This document shows positions 7,652 through 48,548 of a stretch of DNA of 64,000 nt, one piece after another. Below the pieces are notes generated by a model, which did no database searches, was not told the DNA's origin, and worked only from the letters and a program-made list of their open reading frames with translations. Every line of letters begins with the position of its first letter. Position 1 is the first letter of the stretch. The position numbers and the translations under genes are program-made. The DNA comes from Botryllus schlosseri (taxonomy: Eukaryota), in assembly GCA_051294905.1 (NCBI GenBank), contig CM119379.1, positions 22,072,001 to 22,136,000 of the forward strand, written 5' to 3'.

Positions 7652-8599
7652 ATTTTCAGTTCATTTCAATGCATAGCACTCGCCAATCTGCGTGTATCAA
7701 TGCTCAAAATAGCCTATATAGAAACTATAGAAGTCTATGTGCAATATGTCTATGTGCAATATGTGCATGTGCTGTGCATGATGCTTTTGAATTAGCCCGA
7801 TGGTGAGATCAGAGGTAGGTTAGCTACCGTTAAATTTTCGTTAAGTAGCCTACTTGATTGTTTTCATGCGGCTCCAGCTTCATGCGTACCCGGAAGATGG
7901 ACTCGACATGCTGCTCCGACATATAAAAAGGTCGGGAACTACTTCTAAACGGCTGAATATATATGGATTATCTGTGAAGGTGATAGATGTTGGCTTCATC
8001 AATGCATATTGCACAATTGTTGCGTATTAAATGAATTGCACCTCGCTATACTGATCGCATAAAACGTACACGTTTTATATCTTCAGGTCAGGGATATCTA
8101 TTAGGCTACAACTCTAGATATCCCTGCTTCAGGTTGGTTGGTTGAATTGTACTGTATTTTGATATGAAACGATGCAACAAATACTGCATGCAGTGTATTA
8201 AAATGTAACAAACACATATAGGGTTCAAATAGTCCGTAATTCTTCAAATACAATACTAAGCCAGACATCAAGGACTGAAACCCTATTTGCACTTGATAAA
8301 GCTACACCACAAAACAAGAGGAATTAAACGCAAAAAGCTTTTAGCCGAAGAGAAATTCATTTATCGAAAAGCTAGCAACGCTCTGAAGGCTGAATCCACA
8401 AATCAATGTTTTGGTGGCCGATACGCCGTTATATGAGCTCATTGACGATTGTTACTCCGTAGCTCGTCATTATTTCACCATAATCACCCATCTTGTCTTG
8501 AAACGAACGAAGTACTGTTTATTGTGTCATAATAACCTAACGATGAGAATTGCGAACGGGAGTATTTTACGTGCAATTTCTACTTTAAATAGGCTTTTC

Positions 8600-9250
8600 G
8601 AAGTACAGAACTTCAATATTGCAGCAAAAAATACGTTGATATTGCCAAATTTATTCCACTGGAAGCTTTTCGACTGGCTCTCTTCAGAAGTGAACGCCAG
8701 TAAAAGAGGTTAACCAAGTTCGAAAGATTAATAATTTTGTCGTTGTGACGTAATAATGACAAGTACACATAGTCGATTGCGGTACAGCACACAGATGTAA
8801 AACAGCCGAATGACAAAACAACTCTCATGGAAGATTCCCAGCGTGTAGAGATGTTCCTTTGAACTGCAGCTTTATGGTGGTTGATTCAAGGACCTTTAAA
8901 TGAAAAAGAGAACGAGACCACGAGCAACTATGGAATACTGATCGTTATTGTAATGTTTTGCACACTCTGGGTGTTTCAATAGGTGCTGTCTGATGGTATA
9001 ATTACATGCTGTTACTTGGTCATAATCACGCATGGTAACTATAGGTGTATAATATATGATGTGAACGGCGGTACCTACTTTTTGCCTTGATCTCGTAATG
9101 AAATGCCGAATTACAACTTGTTCAATGTTCGTACAACATACATACACTCCATACCAAGCATTACCTCTGGAATTAAGTGCCCAATAAACTGCTTTTTGGC
9201 GAAAATGCAGGTCAACCTTCCCCTATTTTATCTTCCTTATCCACAACATC
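8600..9250 (-). mobile_element. Penelope-like retroelement remnant (GIY-YIG endonuclease C-terminus plus terminal-repeat region)
   Basis: Minus-strand frameshifted translation TIRQHLLKHPECAKHYNNDQYSIVARG / RSLFHLKVLESTTIKLQ / KEHLYTLGIF, with a degraded YVVRT upstream. This resembles the PLE endonuclease end as I recall it (SAIGQHLL.NP.CA..Y....FSI...ARS.FHL.VLE...IK...KEFVY.L.LF). A hammerhead motif follows directly downstream. Confidence 0.75.
8655..8694 (-). ncRNA. Minimal type I hammerhead ribozyme motif
   Basis: Minus strand: uucacuu CUGAAGA GAgccagUC GAAA AGCU UC cagugga. Complete core, 2-bp stem II, palindromic stem III (AAGCUU), 6-bp stem I with a mismatch at the 1.1-2.1 position. 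Predicted cleavage between 8662 and 8661. Confidence 0.75.
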
Positions 9251-10179: not shown

Positions 10180-13100
10180 TCACAACCCCGAATTCGTGTA
10201 TAAACCTCTCGAAGACCACGGCCCCGACCTCAAGCCCGACTCGTTACGCGCACGCGCGCTACCCATCGTCCTGCTCACGTCTTCAAAGTTCAACTCCTGC
10301 GTCCACCTGAACAAGTCCTTCACCTCCTGGTCCTCTATCTCGCTCTCCCTCCCGCCCGCCGAAGGAAACATCGCGCGCGTGTCGACCCGCGAAGGCTGCG
10401 GAGCCGGACTGAGTTCTGTCTCGTCGAAATCCGGTACGTCTCCGGTTTTGGACTGCATCCGGGCGCGGTCGGCTTTCACGGCGATGGTGGCGTCGCCGCG
10501 CTGGTTGTTCTCGGCGTAGTCGGCCGGCGAGTCGAGGCCGTACGTCTTGCGCATTTGGTGAACGCGGCGCCTGGCTTGCACGGAGCGGCGCTTGGATTGG
10601 GACGATCCCGTGACTGCGCGACGGGAGAAGTTGGCTTGCGGCGCGCTGATTGAATCCCGCGGGTCTCTGTACGTGAAGAGACTCGTGGAGGTACATGAAT
10701 TCAGTGTGCAACTGAATCATATATTCGTATTGAAGTAAACCCGAATGCTTTCGACGGACACTCGTCAGGTTTAATCGTCAGTAACTAGTAGCGAATTCTT
10801 AATCAATTCTCCACTGGTGCTGACGATATCTCCTCACGAGTGACAGCCGAATATATTCAATATGAATTTATTACTCAATAGTCTCTGCGAGGAGGATTTC
10901 ACCATCTCGCCAGAAATATATCAGAGGCGGTCAGTGGCGAGGTACTTCAACTTTCTCGGAGTATTTCAGCAGGTTTTGCCTACATTCTTAGTGAATAGAG
11001 AATGTATTCACATCCTAAATATGCTACACTAAAACTGGACCTACCTCAGTATTATACTGCAATATAAATGAAGCAGGACGTTTGAATTCAAATGGCGCTT
11101 GACAAATTAGAATAATCACAAATGGAGTACGAAGGAACGTAGCTTACGTAGGGACGTAGTAGAAATACACATCGCTCAATCAATCAAATTATGAACAATG
11201 AGAAAATAGCGTTAGGTAAGAGATACAACGGGTCTCGTGTCATCATAAATTCATACTATATTTGACGATAATCTTCGCGAATATAGCTGTGGAGAGTGAA
11301 TGGTACATCATCGCTAGAATAAATCTAACGTAGCATAGAATCCAAATTGGTCAATATTAATGGTAGAATTAGGTAGATATCGTCCTCAAAATCAAATATA
11401 CTTACTGAAGTCTTGATATTGCACGAATATGTTGCAGTTGAACGTCCTGCGTCACCGGTCTCGACATTATCGTAGGCATTTGACTTCGTAGTCTATCGCT
11501 CGGCGACTTAGTTTGAAGGTATTCCACGATATCGAACATTATACTTTGCCGTGGCAGTGTCTCTAAAGTGAGCTGGCGCCAGTAGTTTTCCCTGCCTCCG
11601 AGATAGGATGGGGTCTCGTCCACGTTGCTGAGGTACTGAGTAATCAATAAACGTGAGTGTATTGCCTGCGCTTTGCAAATGATTAAAGATGTTGATTCAA
11701 TCACACGATATTCTTAGGGGCCACGATAGAATGAACGAACTTAAGCCGGCATCTTGTATGTAATCTACATCTCCCATGAACTATGTAGGTGGCCAGGGTT
11801 ATGTAAAGACACCTAACAAAGCATCTAATTAATAGTGAGACCGATGCACAAAATAAATCCACCTGCATATAATCTTGCATTGTTGTGACGTCCACTTCAT
11901 CGGTTATCTTGTATTTTTCATGTTGACAAGCATCTATGATCATTTGGTCATAAAACTTTCTATGGCCCATTAACTGGCAAGCATCTGAAGCAGCCTGATA
12001 AAATAACAAGGGTGCAAAACATACTTTTGTAAACCAGGTATGCCTATTTCAAACAAGGAGACATTCACATTTAATAGTCAACAGTTGACTATACTCAGAG
12101 GTGTTTTACCAAGTGTACTTTGTCTACTTCCAGAACTTACTCATGTGGTGAGATTATGGACTAATATCACATATTTAAACCAAACTGCATGCTTTTTACA
12201 TTTTCAATATTTTCAAGTAGAAAGTAGATTATAAATGTAAAATGAATGACTACCTATATCTCACACTAATTGTTTTCAGTGCTAGTTCCGAATTTAGAAA
12301 ACAAGATTTGAGTTGAAATTCTTATATCTACATACATTAAGATCAAGTATTTTCACTTGTGAGCTGCATTAGTTGCATAAATCTTGACCATATATGACGT
12401 TGGATGACATAATTTTTATGAGAACTCAGAGAGCAAAGGAATGGATGCGTCACCAAGAACTAACTTCAGCAAACTTGCAAAACCAATTTCGACAGGGATA
12501 ATATTTAGTATATGCGCTGATTTCCATCATGGGAGTTGGTGGTATGGGTAGTATGCTGGTTCTTTGGCTTGCTGTTTTGGACATTTGAATTTGTGCAGTG
12601 GTTGTTTTGTATGACTGCATTTATAATTTTACATGGTTTTCTGCCCAGTTAGTCCACAGCACTTTGAATATGTCTACATTTTGTCAATATTTGGCAGGCT
12701 TAACAAAAACACGACCAGCACGCAGTTTCACCAGTTCTGGTCTATATCCAATTTTACATCCATCCATTATAAACATACATTTTTATAAATTAGCTGCTAC
12801 AGTAATAAATGTCAAGAAATCTTACTTCAGTTGCTGGCTGTATAGTTCGCCTTCCAGAAATATATTTCATGCCGACTCCAACCAGATATATTTTAAAAAC
12901 TATAATAGGAGGGAATTCGGTTCCAGCAAAACGAAGACGGACCCTCGCTTTTACTGTGGGGTCTTTCAATAAATCTGCTTCCAGTGGGCTTATCTTTCGC
13001 AAGAAATCATAGGTCCAAGACTTTTCCTTAACAAAATATAATAATAAAAACATACTACAATAAGAGCTTAATCCACGGTTCAACTGGACATGAGTAGTAA

Positions 13101-15884: not shown

Positions 15885-18800
15885 TCAAACGGCTTCTTGT
15901 CTGGAGTTAGTCGCCATACTTGGATCCGAGTTAACGCCACTATCATTATCGGGACTCAGCGGGGTTGAGCTCTTACTTTCGGAATTCGGCTCCAAACCAT
16001 ACTGATCTATGAAGGACCCGTCTTCCTCGTATTCGCGAGTGTTACCGTTGCCGAACGCTTCAATCGAATCTCCCCCAACGCTGCTTCCGCGCAAACGAGG
16101 CTGCCCGTTTTGAGTTGTCTCATCTACCTCTTTTACATCATTATCAAGACCGTTGGTTCGCGAGAGACTGTAAAGCAAACACCGGTGATATAGTGTAGTG
16201 ATGACAGGCATAAGATTATATAGTGCTGCAGGTAGTGGATAATTCTTTTCGGTGACGTCACCTTGAAGATTGGTTCGAGGTTTTGAATGACTCTGCAAGA
16301 CAAGTGGATTTAATATTTTCAAATTCTCAGAATCAAATCCAAGTGAAAATTCAAATCTAGATTTGATATCGTATCAGGTTCAGATTGAAGTTATTATTTG
16401 ATGACAGTCCCGCGGAATTATAAATTGAATGAATGGTTCATGATGCAGAACTTCAATATACTCATCATTCTTCAAAGCTTTTCGATTGATTCTTCTTAAC
16501 AGGAAGAATCGTCATTACAAAGGTAAATACAAAATGTGAAATTGAAACGGAGTAGTACGATATAAATTAATATGGCATTGTGACGGACTGAAGAAAAATA
16601 GGGAAAAAGAAAAAAATGTGGTGAAAGAAATCACACCGGAAATTAATAAAAAGAAATGAATAGGGAAAAAAACGGATTCGAAAACCGGGAATCCCCAACC
16701 TTTTGAAAATATAGTGCGATGAATATTCTATTACGAGTAAATTATAGATTATTCCAAATGTTCACGTCCAAATTCAAATCCACCCAATACTGTGATTCAA
16801 CTTATTTGCATAAGCAGAGCTCAATACCTGTATTTCCCGCCCTCTTGACTTTTCATAAGCTGAGCCTCGCTCTTGACCAGTTCCTCTTCTTTTTCGGACA
16901 CTGTGAAAACATCATTGGCCAATAATGCTTCATAATACTTTCTACTATACCGCATCGCAAATCGAATGTGAAACCGGGCTTTTCAGATTGTCGATAGTGG
17001 CATGTAGATAAGCAGGCAGCCGTTTCATGTTTTACGATCCGACAAATGATATTGTGTGCGATACACTCAGCATAGTTTGTTCAAAATTTGATCGTAAAAC
17101 GATCAAGTCGGCCCAATTTGTTATCTTTAACACTTGTCGACATAATATGATATTTTTATTACATCGTTCGCGGAATCTCTTTATTGTACAAATGGGATCA
17201 CATCACTATATATATGACTCAGACAATAAACATCGCTATAGCCGAGCTTTAAGGCCAGTGATATTTCAAGCTCCGCAACTTTAGGCGGATCAATACAGTC
17301 ATACACAAATGCATGTAAAACGCCAACTCACATCTGATACCATAATAACGCCCAAGTTTCCTATCTCCCACGTTTTCACGGCAAACCAGGCGATAGGCCA
17401 GATAGATCTATAAATCTGAGGTCATTGCCAAGAAGATAAGTGAGACTGCCTCCTTCAAGGATTCCAGACATTGTGTCGTCACATACACTATTTTTCGTTG
17501 TATCCGAACTATATTTGCTGTGACAATTAACTGATCAGTAGTGCAAGTTTGTGGGACTTCTTTTTATACAGCTTACGCGATTCTAAGAATCTATCTAGCA
17601 TGATGTTTGAAGCTGTTTACAGGAACTTTATATTGCAGCTTTTTTCTATTTTTCATGCAACATTTTACTGTAACTTGTATCAAGTATTGCGCAAAATGTA
17701 AAGTAAATAGTGATTTAAATTCTCGATATAAAATTATTTCTAGTATGTTTCTATTTATTCTCTTTGATTTGCATAACGAAGAGCTATGTTATGGCATATA
17801 TATCTCAATGTGATCTATGCAGCAACGGTTGGCTTGCAAGCTAAATGCTCAACAACCCGACCCAAGCACGACAGTGCCCAAACTAAATTAGAAGTAGAAG
17901 TATTGCTTGGCTTTTGGCCAAGCCCACACAAACGAAAACAGGTTATGTCTAGTCTTTCGGGGTCAAGTTGATATAGCTCGTTAAACTGTGTGTTTATAAA
18001 AGTGCATTCGTTATTTTACAAGTAAGAAAGGTGGGGTTATCGCTTTGCAGTTTGTATTTTTGCGGAAAATTAATCGCGTATTGCGTTATTTCTTGCTGGG
18101 TACTGGAAAAAAATGTTATTCTCGTCAGGCCTCCGTGAAATTGGGAATAACGAAATCGGACACGGACAGCTATACATGAGCTGACAGCGAAATGCTGTCA
18201 TGTACGTTTGATACCTAATGAACATAAAAATATATGCATGATCAATTGTGTGGCGGCGAAAGAAATGGAACAAGCAGACACCCCAATACCAATCTTAGAC
18301 TTTTGGGTTATACAGAAGAACCTTTCGAGTAAGTCATACACTAATAATTAAAAAAAAACTTTTGTGAATAAATGCAACTTTTTATTGCAACCTTTGTAAA
18401 AAATAAATGCAACTTCCTATGGCAAAAACTTTTGTTAAATATAAGTGCAACTTTCTCGCGATTTTAGTACAACAAAAACTTGCCTTACTGATCACTATAC
18501 AGTACACCTTTTCATATTGCAGCCCTATTATGATGCCACGATAAGAAAGACTTTCCAACTTATGCATAACACTTTACAACCTACGTGATCCCCGTATTAC
18601 ATCGGTACTGCGGTTGTGTTCTATTCTTAAATCATGATTTCAGAGAACTAGCGTTCAGGTTTTCTTGAACCTTGACCCGAAAGGACTGACCCTGTATTGG
18701 AGTCAGTGACTAGTTTCATTTGTCCGCATGTAATTCGGCGGGTAATTCAATAATTGTAATCCTCCGTTATCAGGGGTTGGTTTCATTAGAGTAAAACAAC

Positions 18801-42800: not shown

Positions 42801-45800
42801 TCTTGGAAAATGAATGACGGGTTAGCACCAGGGATATATAAAACTTTATTTATGCGAGGTATGGTCCTTGATGGGAATCGGTCATGAAGAAGCGAACACC
42901 GTATCAACTATTTACCATCATCGTTGAAGATTATGCAATAAAAGAATGATCTACATTCGAATTCAATGAATGTGGTTATGTAGCAATTTTCAACGAACGC
43001 GTGAGAAATTAAGGCTGCGTGCAGCATAAGATATTTGTATATACTAATTTCTTGGAGGTACAGAACTTCAATATACAATTGAATACCATTAATTTCACGG
43101 TATAACAAGATCCCTCAATATGAAATACAGATTTGTGGCCATTCTGATAAATGGCCTATATATGCGCTATTTAGGATAGCGTTATCATGAAAGTTCTTAA
43201 CTAATGGCTACAAAATACTATTTTTCGCATTTGACAGAATACAGGCAAGTAAATAGTAACACCTTCAAGTTTCATTCGTGTCATAGACACGTATCGCCAC
43301 AACGATATCAAGTTAAGCAATCCTAAAAACTTGAAACTGTTTGGAAACCTTTAATTATGTTGTGACAGTGACAGCTATATAGACCACCGTAACTATGCAG
43401 TCGTGCTGCAGCCGTAGAAATTGTAAGTAAAACGGACGTGGCATATAATATAACACCACTATTCGGAGATTTCACGCCCTTCTTGATGACTTACATGTAT
43501 GTTCCCTCATCGGAATACTGCACATTCTTTATCACGAGAGTTCTGTTGAAATCAATCGCTTCGAATCGATTTTCAGAACTCCAATATACCGACGGCGTCG
43601 GACTGAAATGGAATATAGATAAATAATTTAACAGCAGTCAGATGTAATTGAGTATACAAGCGACGCGTTGAGGTATAGTTTCCAATAATCCGCTTCTAAA
43701 TTCATGCATATGTACTCACTGTCCCGTCGCTATACACGGTAAAGAAAAATCTTCTCCCCGCATGACCACGATGGAAGCCTCATTCGATTTTGGATACACA
43801 ATTTGCGCTGATTTATCATTGAATTCAACATCTGTATAGTAAGGGGTAATTCTAGTAATATAACGAAATAAGGCATGCATAATAACCCATACACGGAACT
43901 AACCATTTGTGACTCTTATGGTGTGGTGGATGGAATCGATAGAAGTGCGCGTAGCAAGATACTTCCAGGAGCAATAAAAGACCAAGCCATTATCAGAAGA
44001 AACGACATTCGAGAAGATAATACTGCCATCGGGAGCCTTAAGAAAATTGACATCAATTCAATATAAAAACATAGTAATACTGTGTGTATATACAATAGTT
44101 GTTCCTATACGAACCTGTGCAATTCTGTTGGACTTTTCAAAATCGTCAGTCTTAAACTGCCAGTTGACTCCGACCTCGTTTGAATTACCGTCGGGCCGGA
44201 CACAAGGTTTAATCAACGGGTCACCGAGTGCAACTGTAATTTCATCATCTTCAGGTGTTATAAAGGGTGGAGCTGAAACGGAATTCACCAGGGCTTGAGA
44301 TTCGTTTCTACAAAAGCATCGGTCGCTCTTACTGGTCCCGATCCTGACAACGGCCTTTGTTGACAGCGCCGTGCCCCACTTATTTTTAGCGAAGCATTGG
44401 TACGTGCCTTCGAAATCGCGATTTATAGCGGAACTTGAGTTGCCAGGCTCACTGAAAAGAGCGAGTTGTCAATTAGTAACATCTCGTCATTGTGCGCGAG
44501 TAGAATGCACTGGAATGATCCCAAAGTTTCTGATTACTTCGATTCCCATTGCGTGACTGCATAGGGCCGTTATAAAGGAAACAGCGAATGCGTATTAGGG
44601 TTTGCAGTCATAGATATGCAGATACCAGTTCTGACAACGTAATTAAAAATATGCCAAGTCGACAACTAACGATTGTAATGGCTCTCAGTGCTGAGGTGGT
44701 CACTGACACATTTCGGGAAAGCCATAGACCAGACCTGGGCATTCTGGGCAATGGGCGGCCCGCGACGTGATTTTGAGCGGCCCACGAAACGTTGGCTGTA
44801 ATTGAGAACATAAAACCTATTCTTAAATGTTAATCTGTGGACAAAAATCATTGGCCGTATAAATTGAACCGTACATTCGTTCGCTGTGAAACCGACTGTC
44901 GAAATCCCAAGAAGATTCGGAGCACTAAAGATTTGTTTACTGGAGTCAGGGGTGATGTCGAACTACTTCAGGAAAAATCACGTTCTATGTCAGTGGGCTT
45001 AGTAATGTATTATATGAGATTAAAAGTGTTAATGATACAAAGTTTCGTCCGCTAATGTCACTGCAATCTTCTCACGACTCCACGTCACGCGTTGGAAATT
45101 CAGGGAGTAGCCGAAGAAATCAACCTAGAATTCGGGGTATCGGACGAATATCTCGCCGGACTTGTTAGCGACTGAATTGCATTTCCTTATTGTGTGTTTC
45201 GATTTTGAGCCAATTTGAGCCAACCATCATTATCAATCGGTGTTGTTTATTCTCTAGATACATTCAATCGCGGGTTTAGGTAATTTGGTTGCTTCGCGGT
45301 AGGGACGGTTGTGATTAATGCATGGTTTTTAAAACTTTGTTATATATACAATATACATCCAATCACTGTGTGCTTACGTTCCGTCGTACTCCGTTTTTAC
45401 TCATTTTAGTTTCTTGGGCATCATTTGGATTAAAATGCTGTGTTTGATTTATACAGCAGTATAATACTGAGGTAGGTTTTGTTATCGTGTAGCGTGGACT
45501 ACCACCTTTAAGGGGTGAAAACACACTACAGATTCTTTTCTTTTAGGGTGCAGCAAATGGTAGGATATGCAGACTGCAGACATTGGGCATTGCCATATAT
45601 ATATTATATATATAACAGGAAGCCTATGAATATGTATGGATATTGGCAATGTTCAAGTGTTAGCTTTCCAACCTGAATGTGACAGAGCCATGTGGTCCTG
45701 GCATAATCAATTCAAGCGAGCCTCTTCCACTGTGCAAGCGATTGACTTTCACCCTCTTGCCATCCTTCTTCCAATGGTAACTGTTCGAACAACATAGCAT

Positions 45801-48548
45801 TATCCAACACGACTACGCGCAATGAAAATACATAACTATATAATACCTTGCGTAGGCTTGCTACGACAACAGCAACAACAACAAAGGTTACAAGTGAATT
45901 CGGCGTTTGTCAGCCCCTAAAATAATCCCTAACTTCTACACCAGCGGTTCTCAACCCTTTAGGACATCCAACCCCTTGGCGATGGTCAAAAAAATTGCGC
46001 CCCCCGATCCCCTACACTTGTCGTCATGTCAAAAAGAGCACATCATCTAATACAAAGGTAGGCAGCCTTTTTGCTAATCACGGCCGCATTTCGATTACTT
46101 ATGTAGCCTAAGGTTGCATTCCAGGGCATAGCCGTATTGAAGTAACTGGGCGCAAAATACCTATGTTAATCTGTCCATATCCATTCCAGGTGAACTCAAG
46201 ACTATTCTACTTTTCACAACGGCCTATTGTACGCATGCACCAAAATCGTGAGTGACAATGTTGAATAGTTGCTGGGATCGCATATTGTCGCGCAGAGCGC
46301 GACAATTTTTTAGATTCACGAATGAATTCCGTAATTAATAGTATCAGTATCACATATTACTATCAAATATTTATTCTTTCCCCGCCCACGTGATCAGATT
46401 CACCGGTAATGCATCTTCGGGTGTGCCAATTGTTAATAGTCACTTTGTTGCATGCTGTTATTTCTTGACTACCCATCAGGATTGTCAATTGTATCGGTAG
46501 TGGAAATAGTGGAAATATATTGAAATCGCCCAAATGTACCTTCAACAAATTTCTTTCGCGATGAGCACACGACTCCGATTCCGGCTCAGATTGAAAAAGG
46601 TGCTACTATATTGAAATCAAAAAATGAAGTTATGTTGATTTTAGCGGAGCGCGAAAACAGTTTCAAGGTTAATTAAAATCTCTTAAAAAAATTGGGAGTG
46701 AATTCGTAATTTCCATTTGCATGTCGACGGACGCCAACACATACTAATTGAATTAGGTGTCGATGGCCGCACAAATTCCCTTCTACGGCCGCAGGTTGCC
46801 TATCCCTGATCTAAAAGTATACACATGGTATGTCTTACGCCAAGTTTATATCCGCATTCCAGTTGTTGAGTCTTTAACATTTCTGACAAATTTCTCCATA
46901 CTTGTTTGAAAATAGCAAAAAACATTGAACGGACATCAGACACAATCAGCCTCGAATTTTTCATTGTTATGGAGATTGGCATTGGGACGCAACAATGCTG
47001 TCTGGCGAAACGAGAGAGTAGCTCAAGAGAAAAAGAGCCAGACAGCATTGTTCAGCATTGTTGCGTCTCAATGCCAATCTCCATAACAATAAAAAATTCG
47101 AGGCTGATTGTGGGAGTTCCAGGGCCACGAGCGGAATAAAATTTATATTTTTGTAATCAGTGCAGAGTCCGCTTTCGATTGATACCTGTTTTACCAAATT
47201 TAATGCTCGGCAAGCCGGTCAAAAATGACCGTCAAATTGCCTGTAGCCAAATGGAAATTGTGACGTGATGCAATTTCACTGAGGCGTGAGATTTGCTTGT
47301 GTCGACACCATATAGGACACTATGATAATACGCTTCCATGTGCGTAATTTACTGACAACCACAACAACTAGTTGGCAATTCCCCGAATTCGAAGCACGTG
47401 CCAGCTTTGCCATTTTGCATACCTGTTCAATGTACACCTAGGGACGGGCACACGAGACGCCTCACAAGTGAGTCGTGTGGGATCATAAAACTAAAACATA
47501 GGAAAATAGTGATCCATGGAAACAATGCTTGAGTACATGGACTATAGCACTAATTTGTAAGAACTAACCCAGTCGGAAATTCTACCGCAGGATTAGCATC
47601 CGCTTCGCATGGCAGTACGGTCTTCACGCCAGGTAATATGTGATAGATTTGATCATGTGGCTGACGAATAATCCTTGGCGGCCGTCGAACTTGTCAAAGA
47701 AATACAAAGCTATTTGTGTACTTGTACTATGGAGCTATAGTGTCAGACTGCTTTGGCGGTAGAATTTCACCGGCAGTATTCAATTCGTTGCTATGCAAAA
47801 AAGTACTATTACTAGATTTAAATGGCTTCTTGGAGGTACATAACTTCAATATACAATTGTTAAAATGAACCCGATTACCCCTGACGAGTGTCAGCCGAAA
47901 ATATTCGGGTTCATTTCAATATGAATATACTATTCAATTGTGTATTACTAGATTCCAAATGCAGGTATTATATTAGGATTTTAAGGGATAGACGGTCATG
48001 GTCACCGCTTTCATTGCGAATAGAAATCATAATTTCCCTCTCATGACGGACCCGAATCCGCATAGCCTACTGAATAATTGTGCCGTATACCTCAGTGGTT
48101 CCAACCTGTTTTGACGGGCGGCCGCGTGTGTTAACTATTTCGCGACCCCACTCTATGATGAGCTATATTTTATCTATTCGGCGTAATCAATTAAAATTCA
48201 TGTTACATAATATCATCTATTCGCAGCCATAGTGGGGCCCATGCTATACGTTGAGCTCTCCGAACATTTTCGAAAGCCGTACTTGCGTGTTGGATGAGCG
48301 TGGTTCCCTATCATCAACGCCTTTGTTCTGATTAGTAGAAGTACCAAAAATCCGCCTTGTATGTTTTGGTAACGGGAAATAGTAGCCTACGTAAAAAGGT
48401 TTGCTTTAATAGTGGGTAGGATGTTCGCATAGAACACCGAAACTGCTCATATGCGGCGTTTGGTGAAAACTATACCCGGGACTTCAAATTTACCACAGGC
48501 TGCAGCAACAAACGAAAGCAGACGTGGATATACCAACACCAAACTCAT
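15885..48548 (-). CDS. L1-family cell adhesion molecule (L1CAM/NrCAM/neurofascin/neuroglian-like), 24 exons, ~1162 aa
   Basis: Exons join in phase (3489 nt): 48494-48548 (tentative signal exon), 47569-47689, 45673-45780, 44333-44451, 44115-44293, 43904-44036, 43720-43831, 43495-43602, 42602-42801, 41876-42004, 41571-41727, 40652-40853, 40402-40582, 39291-39395, 39023-39226, 38850-38970, 38226-38401, 36873-37011, 36660-36811, 36465-36599, 35686-35850, 20669-20800, 16828-16900, 15885-16167. Six Ig domains (e.g. FEGTYQCFAKNKWGTALS), four FnIII, TM followed by IRRRRGGHYP, and a tail with EDGSFIDQY. Confidence 0.93.
16440..16500 (-). repeat. Degraded terminal-repeat/hammerhead fragment of the family at 8600-8694
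   Basis: Shares CAGAACTTCAATAT and AAGCTTTTCGA with 8603-8674. On the minus strand it reads ...AAGAAGA atcaat CGAAA AGCT TT, with the core mutated. Confidence 0.5.
21730..22215 (+). repeat. Dispersed repeat related to 44840-45470
   Basis: Shared blocks such as gacttgttagcgactgaa and ttgatttatac at matching relative positions. Confidence 0.55.
24336..25750. mobile_element. Non-autonomous hAT (Charlie/Buster-type) element with 8-bp TSD TTCTACAT, carrying a nested element
   Basis: Left end CAGCGGTGGCCAAAC, right end ...GGCCCGCGGGCCACGGGTTGGCCGGCCCTG. TTCTACAT at 24328-24335 and 25751-25758. Confidence 0.88.
24858..25539. mobile_element. hAT-type MITE (TAGGGCTGGGCA...TGCCCAGCCCTA) nested in 24336-25750, TSD CTGCCAAT
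   Basis: TIRs with CTGCCAAT at 24850-24857 and 25540-25547, plus ACTCGA-type subterminal repeats. A sister copy lies at 39717-40229. Confidence 0.9.
26293..26860. mobile_element. Second, right-truncated copy of the TAGGGTTGCATTTAAAAC MITE family
   Basis: Aligns with 9275-9689 at both ends. It has a different internal segment and lacks the final AACCCTA. Confidence 0.7.
28316..29253 (+). CDS. Nested antisense gene (terminal exon or intronless ORF) with an FGF-like beta-trefoil segment and a long helical C-terminus
   Basis: 1020-bp open frame (28234-29253) that is visibly GC-richer than its flanks, with a strong acceptor ctttccgttttcag|G at 28315/28316 in phase 1. VTLKHSCSNLYLTVDNFGQARA resembles FGF2 VSIKGVCANRYLAMKEDGRLLA. 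AATAAA near 29586. Coding status is well supported; the FGF identity is tentative. Confidence 0.6.
30185..30302. repeat. Near-perfect 118-bp palindrome
   Basis: catagtgtcctatatggtgtcgacacaggcaaatctcacgcctcagtgaaattgt pairs with acaatttcactgaggcgtgagaattgcctgtgtcgacaccatataggacaccatg. A partial copy lies at 47254-47324. Confidence 0.92.
30611..32553. mobile_element. hAT-like non-autonomous element (CAGTGGCGGCTCGT TIR) nested in 30094-33067, TSD GATCATGG
   Basis: Perfect 14-bp TIRs. GATCATGG at 30603-30610 and 32554-32561. Confidence 0.9.
31510..32060 (+). repeat. About three diverged tandem units of ~200-218 bp inside the nested element
   Basis: ACCGGCTTT starts recur near 31510, 31728 and 31928, each followed by aacg(g)aatta and a(a/g)acttgg blocks. 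Confidence 0.75.
34689..35543. mobile_element. Charlie/Buster-type MITE (CAGGGGTGTCAAAC...GTTTGACAC)
   Basis: TIRs with GGCCCGCG subterminal motifs and flanks CCGTATGG / ACGTATGG. Same family as 50707-51594. Confidence 0.85.
37226..37538 (-). mobile_element. tRNA-derived SINE
   Basis: Minus strand has an A-box-like TAGCGTGATGG and a B-box GGTTCGATTCC, followed by a non-tRNA body starting TCAGACCAAAGAC. The 3' boundary is approximate. Confidence 0.7.
38455..38478. repeat. (GA)n microsatellite
   Basis: Perfect GA run. Confidence 0.95.
39717..40229. mobile_element. hAT-type MITE, sister of 24858-25539 in opposite orientation, TSD ATCACGAT
   Basis: Ends TGGGGCTGGGCA / TGCCCAGCCCAA. ATCACGAT at 39709-39716 and 40230-40237. 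Internal blocks are reverse complements of the first copy. Confidence 0.88.
46941..47112. repeat. Hairpin/MITE-like inverted repeat, ~65-bp arms
   Basis: cacaatcagcctcgaattttt...caacaatgctgtctggc pairs with gccagacagcattgt...aaaaattcgaggctgattgtg around a purine-rich loop. One arm has a short duplication. Confidence 0.88.
47877..47910 (+). ncRNA. Intact minimal type I hammerhead ribozyme motif
   Basis: accc CUGACGA GugucagcC GAAA AUAU UC gggu. Full core, 4-bp stem I, palindromic stem III (AAUAUU). Predicted cleavage after 47906. Confidence 0.75.

What the first reader, a model, noticed from the sequence alone, without database searches (positions are those of the whole stretch)
8600..9250. 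Penelope-like retroelement remnant ending in a hammerhead ribozyme
An unannotated frameshifted peptide (QHLLKHPECAKHYNNDQYSIVARG, RSLFHLKVLES, KEHLYTLGIF) resembles the end of a Penelope GIY-YIG endonuclease. About 140 nt downstream on the same strand is a complete minimal hammerhead with a palindromic AAGCUU stem III. Penelope-like elements are known to carry minimal type I hammerheads in their terminal repeats. The protein and RNA signals support each other and identify the likely source of the other hammerheads in this window.
Basis: partly seen in the sequence, partly recalled or inferred. Interest (0 to 1): 0.75.

Follow-up and report, generated by a model that had tools for sequence, protein, structure and literature searches.

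The report
Dead Penelope retroelement tail with hammerhead
This is a broken, front-truncated copy of a Penelope-like jumping gene. It keeps the end of the element's DNA-cutting enzyme gene and its small self-cutting hammerhead RNA motif, a pairing already known from many animals, so the find is real but ordinary.

Summary
The observation and the reading both hold. Window 9044 to about 8589 (minus strand) is a 5'-truncated, frameshifted copy of a Penelope-like element (PLE). The genome holds 56 scored matches out of 1370 candidates.

- **Protein remnant.** They match the C-terminus of the GIY-YIG endonuclease of fuller copies, which also carry a reverse transcriptase with YVDD and DKG motifs.
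- **Hammerhead.** A complete type I core (CUGAAGA, GAAA, UC) starts 139 nt downstream, with a palindromic AAGCUU helix III. Rfam models miss it.
- **Structure support.** Five PLE families here and three outside contigs share the motif, with compensatory changes. In 31 distinct sequences 86.5% of cells pair, against 24-42% in slid controls.
- **Helix II.** It is only 1-2 bp. Its 5-nt loop pairs with a box just upstream of stem I, in six covarying versions.

- The copy runs 73 nt past the cut site into the start of the next unit's ORF.
- 9045-9250 is not part of the element.
- The window's other hammerheads come from a sister PLE family.

The window copy is dead: no RT, two frameshifts, lost stop and start codons, and one stem I mismatch.

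Other follow-ups of this scan reached the same reading elsewhere in this genome. Self-cleavage and expression were not tested.

The parts
8589..9044 (-). 5'-truncated copy of PLE family A: the end of the endonuclease gene, the 3' UTR, the hammerhead region and the optional tail.
   Evidence: DNA matches to 56 scored copies out of 1370 candidates, all starting at query position 207-210, which is window 9044-9041. Homology ends at 8582-8591. Identity is 92-93% at aligned positions, plus deletions.
8827..9044 (-). Remnant of the C-terminal half of the GIY-YIG endonuclease, in three frame pieces (8917-9044, 8864-8914, 8827-8859). That implies two frameshifts.
   Evidence: Translations, compared with open endonuclease ORFs of other copies. 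Pfam GIY-YIG hit on an intact relative.
8824..8826 (-). Former stop codon of the ORF. It reads TAG in an intact copy and GAG here.
8744..8753 (-). Conserved CRE-like box TTACGTCACA in the 3' UTR / pLTR.
   Evidence: The same box (T[TG][AG]CGTCA[CT]A) lies 67-76 nt upstream of the hammerhead core in all five families. Its function was not tested.
8696..8700 (-). Upstream box CUGGC, complementary to loop II (5' half of the pseudoknot).
   Evidence: 90% of cells paired, and 3 of 5 pairs change on both sides.
8688..8694 (-). Stem I, 5' strand (UUCACUU). The last base is mutated; nearly all other copies have G.
8681..8687 (-). Hammerhead core C3-A9 (CUGAAGA).
8672..8680 (-). Helix II region: G10.1, one nucleotide, the 5-nt loop GCCAG (8674-8678), one nucleotide, C11.1.
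   Evidence: The Rfam RAGATH-1-hammerhead model shows the same layout of 1 bp plus a 7-nt loop.
8662..8671 (-). G12-A14, then the palindromic helix III AAGCUU (8663-8668), then C17. The predicted cut lies between 8662 and 8661.
   Evidence: The central pair is GC in 20 sequences and UA in 7, so the palindrome is kept.
8655..8661 (-). Stem I, 3' strand (CAGUGGA).
   Evidence: 4 of 7 pairs change on both sides.
8589..8640 (-). Remnant of the ORF start of the next tandem unit. The start codon ATG reads ATC at 8638-8640. The stretch includes the ~30-nt optional tail, and the copy ends at about 8589.
   Evidence: the open ORFs of families B-D begin with the same MN/K..LF..ILKFCT peptide; two classes of 3' end, about 43 nt and about 73 nt after the cut site..

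Best explanation
Window 9044 to about 8589 (minus strand) is a dead, 5'-truncated insertion of a canonical, endonuclease-bearing Penelope-like retrotransposon. By its domain order and linker it looks like the Penelope/Poseidon type.

**How the parent element is built.** It is a unit of about 2.7-2.8 kb, found in head-to-tail arrays and head-to-head pairs. Each unit has these parts in order:
1. a type I hammerhead;
2. 15-22 nt later, the start codon of one ORF of about 850 aa (N-terminal region with DKG, RT with YVDD, C-terminal GIY-YIG endonuclease);
3. a 3' UTR with a conserved ACGTCA box;
4. the next hammerhead.

**How a copy is made (inferred).** Copying starts inside the RNA, 43 or 73 nt downstream of the hammerhead cut site. 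It often aborts early. That leaves 3' fragments like this one, which contain the hammerhead and the first codons of the next unit.

**The hammerhead as seen in the sequence.**
- It has the full catalytic core.
- Stem I is 5-7 bp.
- Helix III is only a 6-nt palindrome, so it can form properly only between two copies (a dimer).
- Helix II is cut down to the G10.1-C11.1 pair, and its loop pairs with a 5-nt box just 5' of stem I.

**What is shown and what is inferred.** The anatomy, the homology and the covariation are shown. Self-cleavage (most likely processing of multi-unit transcripts, as published for PLEs) and internal priming (as shown for Poseidon of Anolis) are inferred.

**State of the window copy.** It lacks the RT and has two frameshifts. 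It has lost its stop and start codons and has a stem I mismatch. No matching partner hammerhead lies nearby. It is most likely inert.
For: **Repeat family and truncation.**
- The repeat family and the truncation point are seen.
- Longer copies carry RT and endonuclease ORFs.

**Protein markers.**
- RVT_1 at E 4.9e-12, and GIY-YIG at E 1.5e-4 (22.4 bits against a cut-off of 22.6).
- DKG and YVDD are present, and there is no CX2-5CxxC linker.

**Arrangement of copies.**
- Sister families have open frames of 853-860 aa in arrays with periods of 2778 and about 2692 bp.
- An inverted pair is 98% complementary between its arms.
- In inverted pairs, one end carries the long tail and the other the short one. 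This matches the 30-40 bp tail described in PMC8557442 and PMC11167929.

**Hammerhead.**
- The same template is found in families A-E.
- It is also found in three contigs outside this genome, at 58%, 48% and 40% protein identity.
- Six box/loop pairings occur: CUGGC/GCCAG, CUAAC/GUUAG, CUGAC/GUCAG, GUGCC/GGCAC, CAAGG/CCUUG, CCUAU/AUAGG.
- Pair counts are 82.4% and 86.5% paired, against 24-42% in slid controls.
- The pseudoknot was not part of the search model, yet it is 90% paired.
- Position 17 is C, U or A in the family representatives.
- Family D and one outside contig carry the U3-A8 core covariation reported for Cercyon PLEs (PMC4209133).
- All 150 genome candidates that were scored reach at least 63 bits.
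Against: - No Rfam hammerhead model reaches threshold. There is nothing at E <= 10 on the window copy. On an intact sister copy there is only a 20-bit match to RAGATH-1-hammerhead, against a gathering score of 56.3.
- Helix II as a hairpin is only 1-2 bp. With no or one linker nucleotide, the box/loop helix and the 10.2-11.2 pair can hardly coexist in one molecule.
- Family E carries C at core position 4 and U at 11.1 in every copy seen. An intact core is therefore not needed for a family to leave copies.
- Published work on a lizard PLE found hammerhead mutants insert normally in vitro and found no RNA-seq ends at the cut site (PMC11167929).
- Cleavage and expression were not tested here.
- The GIY-YIG Pfam score sits just under the curated cut-off. 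The endonuclease profile finds no solved structure, and the fold model was useless (pLDDT 33).
- The clade was assigned from motifs, not from a tree.
Confidence: 0.9

Rival explanations
1. The conserved hammerhead-shaped motif is not mainly a self-cleaving ribozyme. Instead it is an RNA structure kept for another step of the element's life: recognition by its own RT/endonuclease protein, positioning of internal priming, or control of translation of the ORF that starts 15-22 nt downstream.
For: - Fixed spacing to the start codon and to the RT start sites.
- Family E keeps the helices and the box/loop pairing, but has C4 and U11.1 in the core.
- In vitro, hammerhead mutants of an Anolis PLE insert normally, and no RNA ends map to the cut site (PMC11167929).
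- Metazoan PLE hammerheads cleave poorly in vitro (PMC4209133).
Against: - The full catalytic core is kept in four of five families and in outside contigs.
- The C3-G8 pair changes to U3-A8 in a concerted way. That is hard to explain without selection on catalysis.
- Position 17 is never G in the family representatives.
- The helix III palindrome is kept by double changes.
- The two roles do not exclude each other.
Confidence: 0.2
2. The locus is a non-autonomous hammerhead carrier (a retrozyme- or SINE-like element), not a truncated autonomous PLE.
For: Very short tail-only fragments of the sister family occur in the window. Animal retrozymes are proposed to derive from PLE pLTRs (bioRxiv 10.64898/2026.07.22.740005).
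Against: - The copy is collinear with the endonuclease coding region, the 3' UTR and the tail of autonomous copies, over 456 nt and without a break.
- No short-period tandem repeat of a small unit was noted at the locus. The repeat finders were not run on this stretch.
- The length variation fits 5' truncation.
Confidence: 0.03
3. The peptide resemblance and the hammerhead core are chance matches in AT-rich intronic DNA.
For: Rfam finds nothing. CUGANGA occurs 30 times in the window.
Against: - High-copy DNA homology.
- Open ORFs in relatives.
- A 72-bit model score.
- Covariation far above the slid and shuffled controls.
Confidence: 0.01

Closest known systems
Penelope/Poseidon-type Penelope-like elements (for example Poseidon of Anolis carolinensis, PAc; Penelope of Drosophila virilis)
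   Same: - One ORF with RT followed by a C-terminal GIY-YIG endonuclease.
- DKG motif present.
- Tandem units forming pseudo-LTRs, with inverted 5'-truncated partner copies.
- An optional ~30-nt tail at one end.
- Insertions whose 3' ends lie inside the start of the ORF, downstream of the hammerhead.
- A hammerhead in the pLTR.

Sources: PMC8557442, PMC11167929.
   Different: - In PAc the ORF starts at stem II, and the cut site is 26 nt after the start codon. Here the start codon lies 15-22 nt after the cut site.
- Clade placement was not tested by a tree.
- The host is, by an earlier unchecked note of this scan, a sea squirt.
Minimal hammerheads of metazoan PLEs (Cervera and De la Pena 2014, PMC4209133)
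   Same: - Type I topology and location in the pLTRs.
- Helix III reduced to a short palindrome that implies dimers.
- A conserved G10.1-C11.1 pair.
- Many covarying consensus families per genome.
- The U3-A8 core variant.
[quoted passage not shown]
   Different: - The published motifs have a long hairpin helix II (6-8 bp) and a short helix I (4-5 bp).
- Here helix II is 1-2 bp, its 5-nt loop pairs with a box upstream of stem I, and helix I is 5-7 bp.
Hammerheads whose stem I-stem II contact is a helix or pseudoknot, and Rfam RAGATH-1-hammerhead (RF03152)
   Same: - A base-paired contact between the far end of stem I and loop II is a known hammerhead feature (stated in PMC10085705).
- The RAGATH-1 model has the same CUGAUGAG, 7 nt, CGAAA layout with a 1-bp stem II.
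   Different: - The match is only 20 bits against a gathering score of 56.3, so this motif is not a member of that family.
- RAGATH-1 has a long hairpin helix III, whereas here helix III is a 6-nt palindrome.
- The carrier here is a eukaryotic retrotransposon.

Membership tests
Penelope-like elements (endonuclease-bearing, canonical order) | Reverse transcriptase domain with the YxDD catalytic motif. | tested here: met
   RVT_1 at E 4.9e-12 (family A copy) and 7e-10 (family B). YVDD is present. This part is absent from the window copy itself because of the 5' truncation.
Penelope-like elements (endonuclease-bearing, canonical order) | GIY-YIG endonuclease at the C-terminus of the same ORF. | tested here: met
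   - Pfam GIY-YIG at E 1.5e-4, 22.4 bits against a cut-off of 22.6.
- The IIY...YVG...R...H...E pattern is invariant in four families.
- PF01541 is on record for homologues P0014 and P0080.
- The score is borderline, and there is no support from PDB sequences or from a fold.
Penelope-like elements (endonuclease-bearing, canonical order) | DKG motif N-terminal to the RT core. | tested here: met
   DKG at residues 279-282 in families B, C and D. Named as diagnostic in PMC8557442.
Penelope-like elements (endonuclease-bearing, canonical order) | Pseudo-LTRs from partial tandems, and inverted 5'-truncated partner copies. | tested here: met
   Arrays with a 2778-bp period and head-to-head pairs. Inverted arms of 787 and 613 nt at 98% complementarity.
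Penelope-like elements (endonuclease-bearing, canonical order) | [quoted passage not shown] | tested here: met
   Two 3' end classes that differ by about 30 nt. In inverted pairs one arm has the long end and the other the short end.
Penelope-like elements (endonuclease-bearing, canonical order) | Hammerhead motif in the pLTR. | tested here: met
Neptune / Nematis clades of PLEs | CX2-5CxxC zinc-finger-like linker between RT and endonuclease. | tested here: not met
   No such pattern in the ORFs of families B, C and D or in the endonuclease region of family A. This points to the Penelope/Poseidon type. No tree was built.
Naiad / Chlamys clades of PLEs | N-terminal GIY-YIG endonuclease and no canonical hammerhead. 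| tested here: not met
   The endonuclease is C-terminal and a hammerhead is present.
Hammerhead ribozyme, type I | Conserved core CUGANGA ... GAAA ... UH, in the order of a stem I-open topology. | tested here: met
   - Window 8687-8662.
- The core is kept in families A-C.
- Family D has the known U3-A8 variant.
- Family E has C4 and U11.1.
Hammerhead ribozyme, type I | Stem I supported by compensatory changes. | tested here: met
   4 of 7 pairs change on both sides, and 82% of cells are paired. The window copy has one mismatch at 1.1-2.1.
Hammerhead ribozyme, type I | Hairpin helix II of several base pairs. | tested here: not met
   Only G10.1-C11.1 (GC 26, GU 3 of 31) and a weak second pair (21 of 31 sequences form a standard pair). 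Instead, the loop pairs with the upstream box (90% of cells paired).
Hammerhead ribozyme, type I | Helix III closing the junction. | tested here: inconclusive
   Helix III is only a 6-nt palindrome (AAGCUU or AAUAUU; an 8-nt near-palindrome in family D). It can form a full helix only between two molecules. The palindrome is kept by double changes.
Hammerhead ribozyme, type I | A match to a curated Rfam hammerhead model at its gathering score. | tested here: not met
   Searches give none. One search gives RAGATH-1-hammerhead at 20 bits against 56.3.
Hammerhead ribozyme, type I | Site-specific self-cleavage. | not testable with these tools
   This needs a transcription and cleavage assay or RNA end mapping.

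The most novel reading that the evidence does not exclude
This PLE lineage includes at least five families in this genome and relatives down to 40% protein identity in marine and other metagenome contigs. It may use a hammerhead architecture not yet described for PLEs. In it, the hairpin helix II is replaced by a 5-bp pairing between loop II and a box just 5' of stem I, combined with a dimer-only palindromic helix III. If so, the pseudoknot rather than a loop-loop contact would set the active fold. These motifs would also be invisible to the descriptors and Rfam models used so far to count PLE hammerheads.
Probability: 0.3. Interest if true: 0.45.

Novelty: new member of a known kind. Interest (0 to 1): 0.25.

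Why it matters
**For annotation.** The result explains an unannotated stretch and the other hammerhead-like motifs of the window. They are debris of Penelope-like retrotransposons, which are very abundant in this genome and have young families with open ORFs.

**For RNA biology.**
- The association of hammerheads with PLEs is textbook.
- The modest added value is a well-supported variant: a 1-2 bp helix II with a covarying pseudoknot.
- Curated Rfam models and the usual minimal-hammerhead descriptors would miss this variant.
- Counts of hammerheads in such genomes are therefore probably too low.

**For the open question of function.** The fixed order of the conserved ACGTCA box, the hammerhead and the start codon gives a concrete system for asking what PLE hammerheads are for.

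Tried and rejected
- **Rfam.** The whole window at gathering thresholds gave nothing. The 900-nt region at E <= 10 also gave nothing. On intact sister copies there was only a sub-threshold RAGATH-1-hammerhead match.
- **My first hammerhead descriptor.** It required a palindromic helix III and at least 2 bp in helix II. It found only the 8687 motif. A looser core scan and the custom model were needed to find the others.
- **Endonuclease profile against PDB sequences.** No hit.
- **AlphaFold model of the endonuclease domain.** Built from a 4-sequence alignment, it reached pLDDT 33 and was unusable, so I ran no fold search.
- **ViennaRNA folding and co-folding.**
  - It cannot model pseudoknots.
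  - Its minimum-energy structures pick the box/loop II helix as a nested hairpin.
  - They do not show the hammerhead fold, so I drew no conclusion from them.
- **Is the hammerhead better conserved than its flanks in the window copy?** It is 96.5% identical against 91-92% for the flanks over a short stretch. This is not significant, so I make no claim.
- **Lunse et al. 2017 (PMC5785218).** This paper on dimeric PLE hammerheads is not held. I could not check whether it already depicts this pseudoknot.
- **Target-site duplication.** A look by eye showed none. I did not pursue it.
- **Trans pairing of box and loop II within a helix III dimer.**
  - I considered it because the cis pseudoknot has almost no linker nucleotides.
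  - I rejected it on geometry. Helix II stacks on helix III, so the two loop IIs would point away from each other.

Full report
**What is at the locus.**

The pieces are 8917-9044, 8864-8914 and 8827-8859, so the copy has two frameshifts. A DNA search of the window's own genome (495 Mb in 219 contigs) with 9250-8600 gave 56 scored matches out of 1370 first-look candidates. All start at query position 207-210, which is window 9044-9041.

With a longer query, homology ends at 8582-8591. BLAST identity is about 83%. At aligned positions it is 92-93%, and the rest is deletions in the window copy. The other copies are 95-98% identical to each other.

**It is a Penelope-like element.**

Other copies continue upstream. 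One locus (L011) holds a near full-length copy in three frame pieces of 253, 289 and 180 aa. Head to head with it lies a 5'-truncated partner whose arms are 98% complementary.

- Pfam finds RVT_1 (E 4.9e-12).
- On the last piece it finds GIY-YIG (E 1.5e-4, 22.4 bits against a cut-off of 22.6).
- That endonuclease ORF ends with the sequence of which the window keeps a frameshifted version.

A search with the RT piece found 135 scored places out of 2002 candidates. Among them are sister families with open frames of 853-860 aa in head-to-tail arrays of period 2778 or about 2692 bp, often next to inverted arrays. These ORFs carry DKG and YVDD and have no CX2-5CxxC linker. That fits the Penelope/Poseidon type as defined in PMC8557442. 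I built no tree.

The word search found 614 relatives. They are mostly unnamed proteins on short metagenome contigs about one unit long.

**The hammerhead.**

The core CUGAAGA starts at 8687, 139 nt after the last endonuclease codon. It is followed by 9 nt, GAAA, the palindrome AAGCUU and C17 (8662). The halves of stem I flank it (8694-8688 and 8661-8655).

Rfam finds nothing, neither at gathering thresholds nor at E <= 10 on 900 nt. The case therefore rests on comparison between families.

The spacer between the stop codon and the next ORF in families A-E holds the same template:
1. a 5-nt box;
2. G;
3. the 5' strand of stem I;
4. the core;
5. G, N, a 5-nt loop, N, C;
6. GAAA;
7. a palindrome;
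8. U, H;
9. the 3' strand of stem I.

The loop is always the reverse complement of the box. The pairs are CUGGC/GCCAG (A), CUAAC/GUUAG (B), CUGAC/GUCAG (C, E) and GUGCC/GGCAC (D). Stem I also differs by compensatory changes. The palindrome is AAGCUU, AAUAUU or, in D, an 8-nt near-palindrome. Position 17 is C, U or A in the family representatives. Family D has U3 with A8, the core covariation reported for Cercyon PLEs (PMC4209133).

*Pair counts.*
- On 10 representatives, 82.4% of cells pair, against 29-42% when partners are slid.
- A covariance model was built without the pseudoknot. It collected 54 matches (31 distinct) from the loci I held.
- On these, 86.5% of cells pair, against 24-42% when slid. 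No shuffle out of 500 reached the observed covariation score.
- The box/loop helix, which the model did not contain, is 90% paired, and 3 of its 5 pairs change on both sides.

*Caveats.* I chose the sequences using a template. They are related to each other. The alignment is fitted to the nested helices.

*Support from outside this genome.*
- A TARA ocean metagenome scaffold with three tandem PLE ORFs (48%) has CAAGG/CCUUG, a U3-A8 core and AAUAUU.
- A metagenome contig at 40% has CCUAU/AUAGG.

In the genome, all 150 scored candidates of the model reach at least 63 bits, out of a rough 278,658 first-look candidates.

**Where the element ends.**

The open frames of families B-D begin 15-22 nt after the cut site, with a peptide (M-N/K-..LF..ILKFCT) that the window copy also keeps downstream of its hammerhead. 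There the ATG reads ATC. Insertions therefore run past the hammerhead into the first codons of the next unit.

Family A copies end in two ways: about 43 nt or about 73 nt after the cut site. In head-to-head pairs, one arm has the long end and the other the short end. This is the optional 30-40 bp tail of PLEs (PMC8557442). For Poseidon of Anolis it was traced to two adjacent internal start sites of reverse transcription within the start of the ORF (PMC11167929). The window copy has the long end, at about 8589.

**How it most likely works.**

*Shown:* the anatomy, the homology and the covariation.

*Inferred from published work on PLEs:*
- transcription across tandem units from the pLTR;
- pairing of two hammerheads through the palindromic helix III;
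- cleavage after position 17;
- target-primed reverse transcription that starts internally and often aborts, leaving 5'-truncated copies.

What the hammerhead is for remains open in the field. Metazoan PLE hammerheads cleave poorly in vitro (PMC4209133). Catalytic mutants of the Anolis element insert normally in vitro (PMC11167929). Here, family E carries C4 and U11.1 in all copies seen while keeping the helices. I therefore give a second, non-exclusive reading (a protein-binding or priming structure) a probability of about 0.2.

Helix II deserves a caution. The loop has at most one linker nucleotide on each side, so the box/loop helix and the 10.2-11.2 pair can hardly coexist. The likeliest picture is the G10.1-C11.1 pair with the box/loop helix stacked on it, taking the place of helix II. 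There is precedent for this:
- the helix-type contact between stems I and II is a known hammerhead feature (PMC10085705);
- the Rfam RAGATH-1-hammerhead model has a 1-bp stem II and a 7-nt loop. It is the only model that aligns to an intact sister copy, at a sub-threshold 20 bits.

**The window copy today.**

It has no RT and two frameshifts. The stop codon reads GAG and the start codon ATC. There is a U.C mismatch at the innermost stem I pair, where nearly all other copies have G-C. No partner hammerhead with the same palindrome lies nearby. I take it to be inert.

**The other hammerheads of the window.**

The model finds 47865-47921 (+, 61.6 bits) and 10728-10784 (-, 59.2 bits). It also finds degenerate ones at 10817-10870 (+) and 16459-16518 (-). 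BLAST against whole units shows what the strong ones are. They are tail-only fragments of family C (RT 59% identical to family A), each with a short inverted partner. A further piece lies at 43049-43085.

**Novelty.**

PLEs with hammerheads in their pLTRs, dimer-type helix III, tandem and inverted copies and tails are all published. This is a new member. The pseudoknotted helix II is a modest variant that I could not find described for PLEs in the papers I could read. The key paper (Lunse et al. 2017) is not held.

Notes of this scan already report the same reading on other DNA of this genome. I had reached it independently. One such note says the genome is a sea squirt's. I did not check that.

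**Not done.**

- A phylogeny.
- A usable endonuclease fold.

Noticed in passing
window 8744-8753 (-); L002, L020, L021, L022, L023: A CRE-like box, T[TG][AG]CGTCA[CT]A, lies at a fixed 67-76 nt upstream of the hammerhead core in all five PLE families, although the rest of the 3' UTR does not align between them. It may be a pLTR promoter element or a protein-binding site.
   Followed up: partly
L022:1099-1157, L031, L032, L034; L037:1142-1196: Family D and a TARA metagenome relative carry U3 together with A8 in the hammerhead core instead of C3-G8. This is the covariation published for Cercyon PLEs.
   Followed up: partly
L023:3553-3609, L024:1623-1679, L029:339-395, L030:1012-1068: Family E has C at core position 4 and U at 11.1 in every copy seen, while its helices and box/loop pairing are kept. 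This is a probably crippled core fixed in a family whose copies also have broken ORFs.
   Followed up: no
window 10674-10797 (-) with 10818-10882 (+); 47816-47858 (-) with 47872-47946 (+); 43049-43085 (-): Very short tail-only fragments of PLE family C, two of them as small head-to-head pairs. The copy at 47872 is truncated inside its own pseudoknot box.
   Followed up: partly
window 16459-16518 (-): A degenerate hammerhead-like match (21.6 bits) with an AAGCUU palindrome but a broken core. It is probably an old PLE tail.
   Followed up: no
G000 C11:891245-904878, C13:6124417-6139054, C10:6486739-6501918, C16:20953798-20960028: Arrays of three to six units with open 853-860-aa frames and near-identical RT segments. 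One block sits on one strand and the next block on the other. These are young PLE families in complex tandem/inverted clusters.
   Followed up: partly
L004, L011, L012, L013 (head-to-head family A pairs): In each inverted pair, one arm ends about 73 nt after the hammerhead cut site and the other about 43 nt after it. [quoted passage not shown]
   Followed up: partly
L037 (TARA ocean metagenome scaffold), L038, L040: Contigs filed under metagenomes carry tandem eukaryotic PLEs with the same box/loop II hammerhead. One close homologue is even labelled as a protein of a Pseudomonadota MAG (P0063), which looks like eukaryotic contamination of a bacterial bin.
   Followed up: no
L020:2978-3037: The only Rfam model that aligns to an intact sister hammerhead is RAGATH-1-hammerhead (RF03152), at 20 bits against a gathering score of 56.3. 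That model also has a 1-bp stem II with a 7-nt loop.
   Followed up: partly
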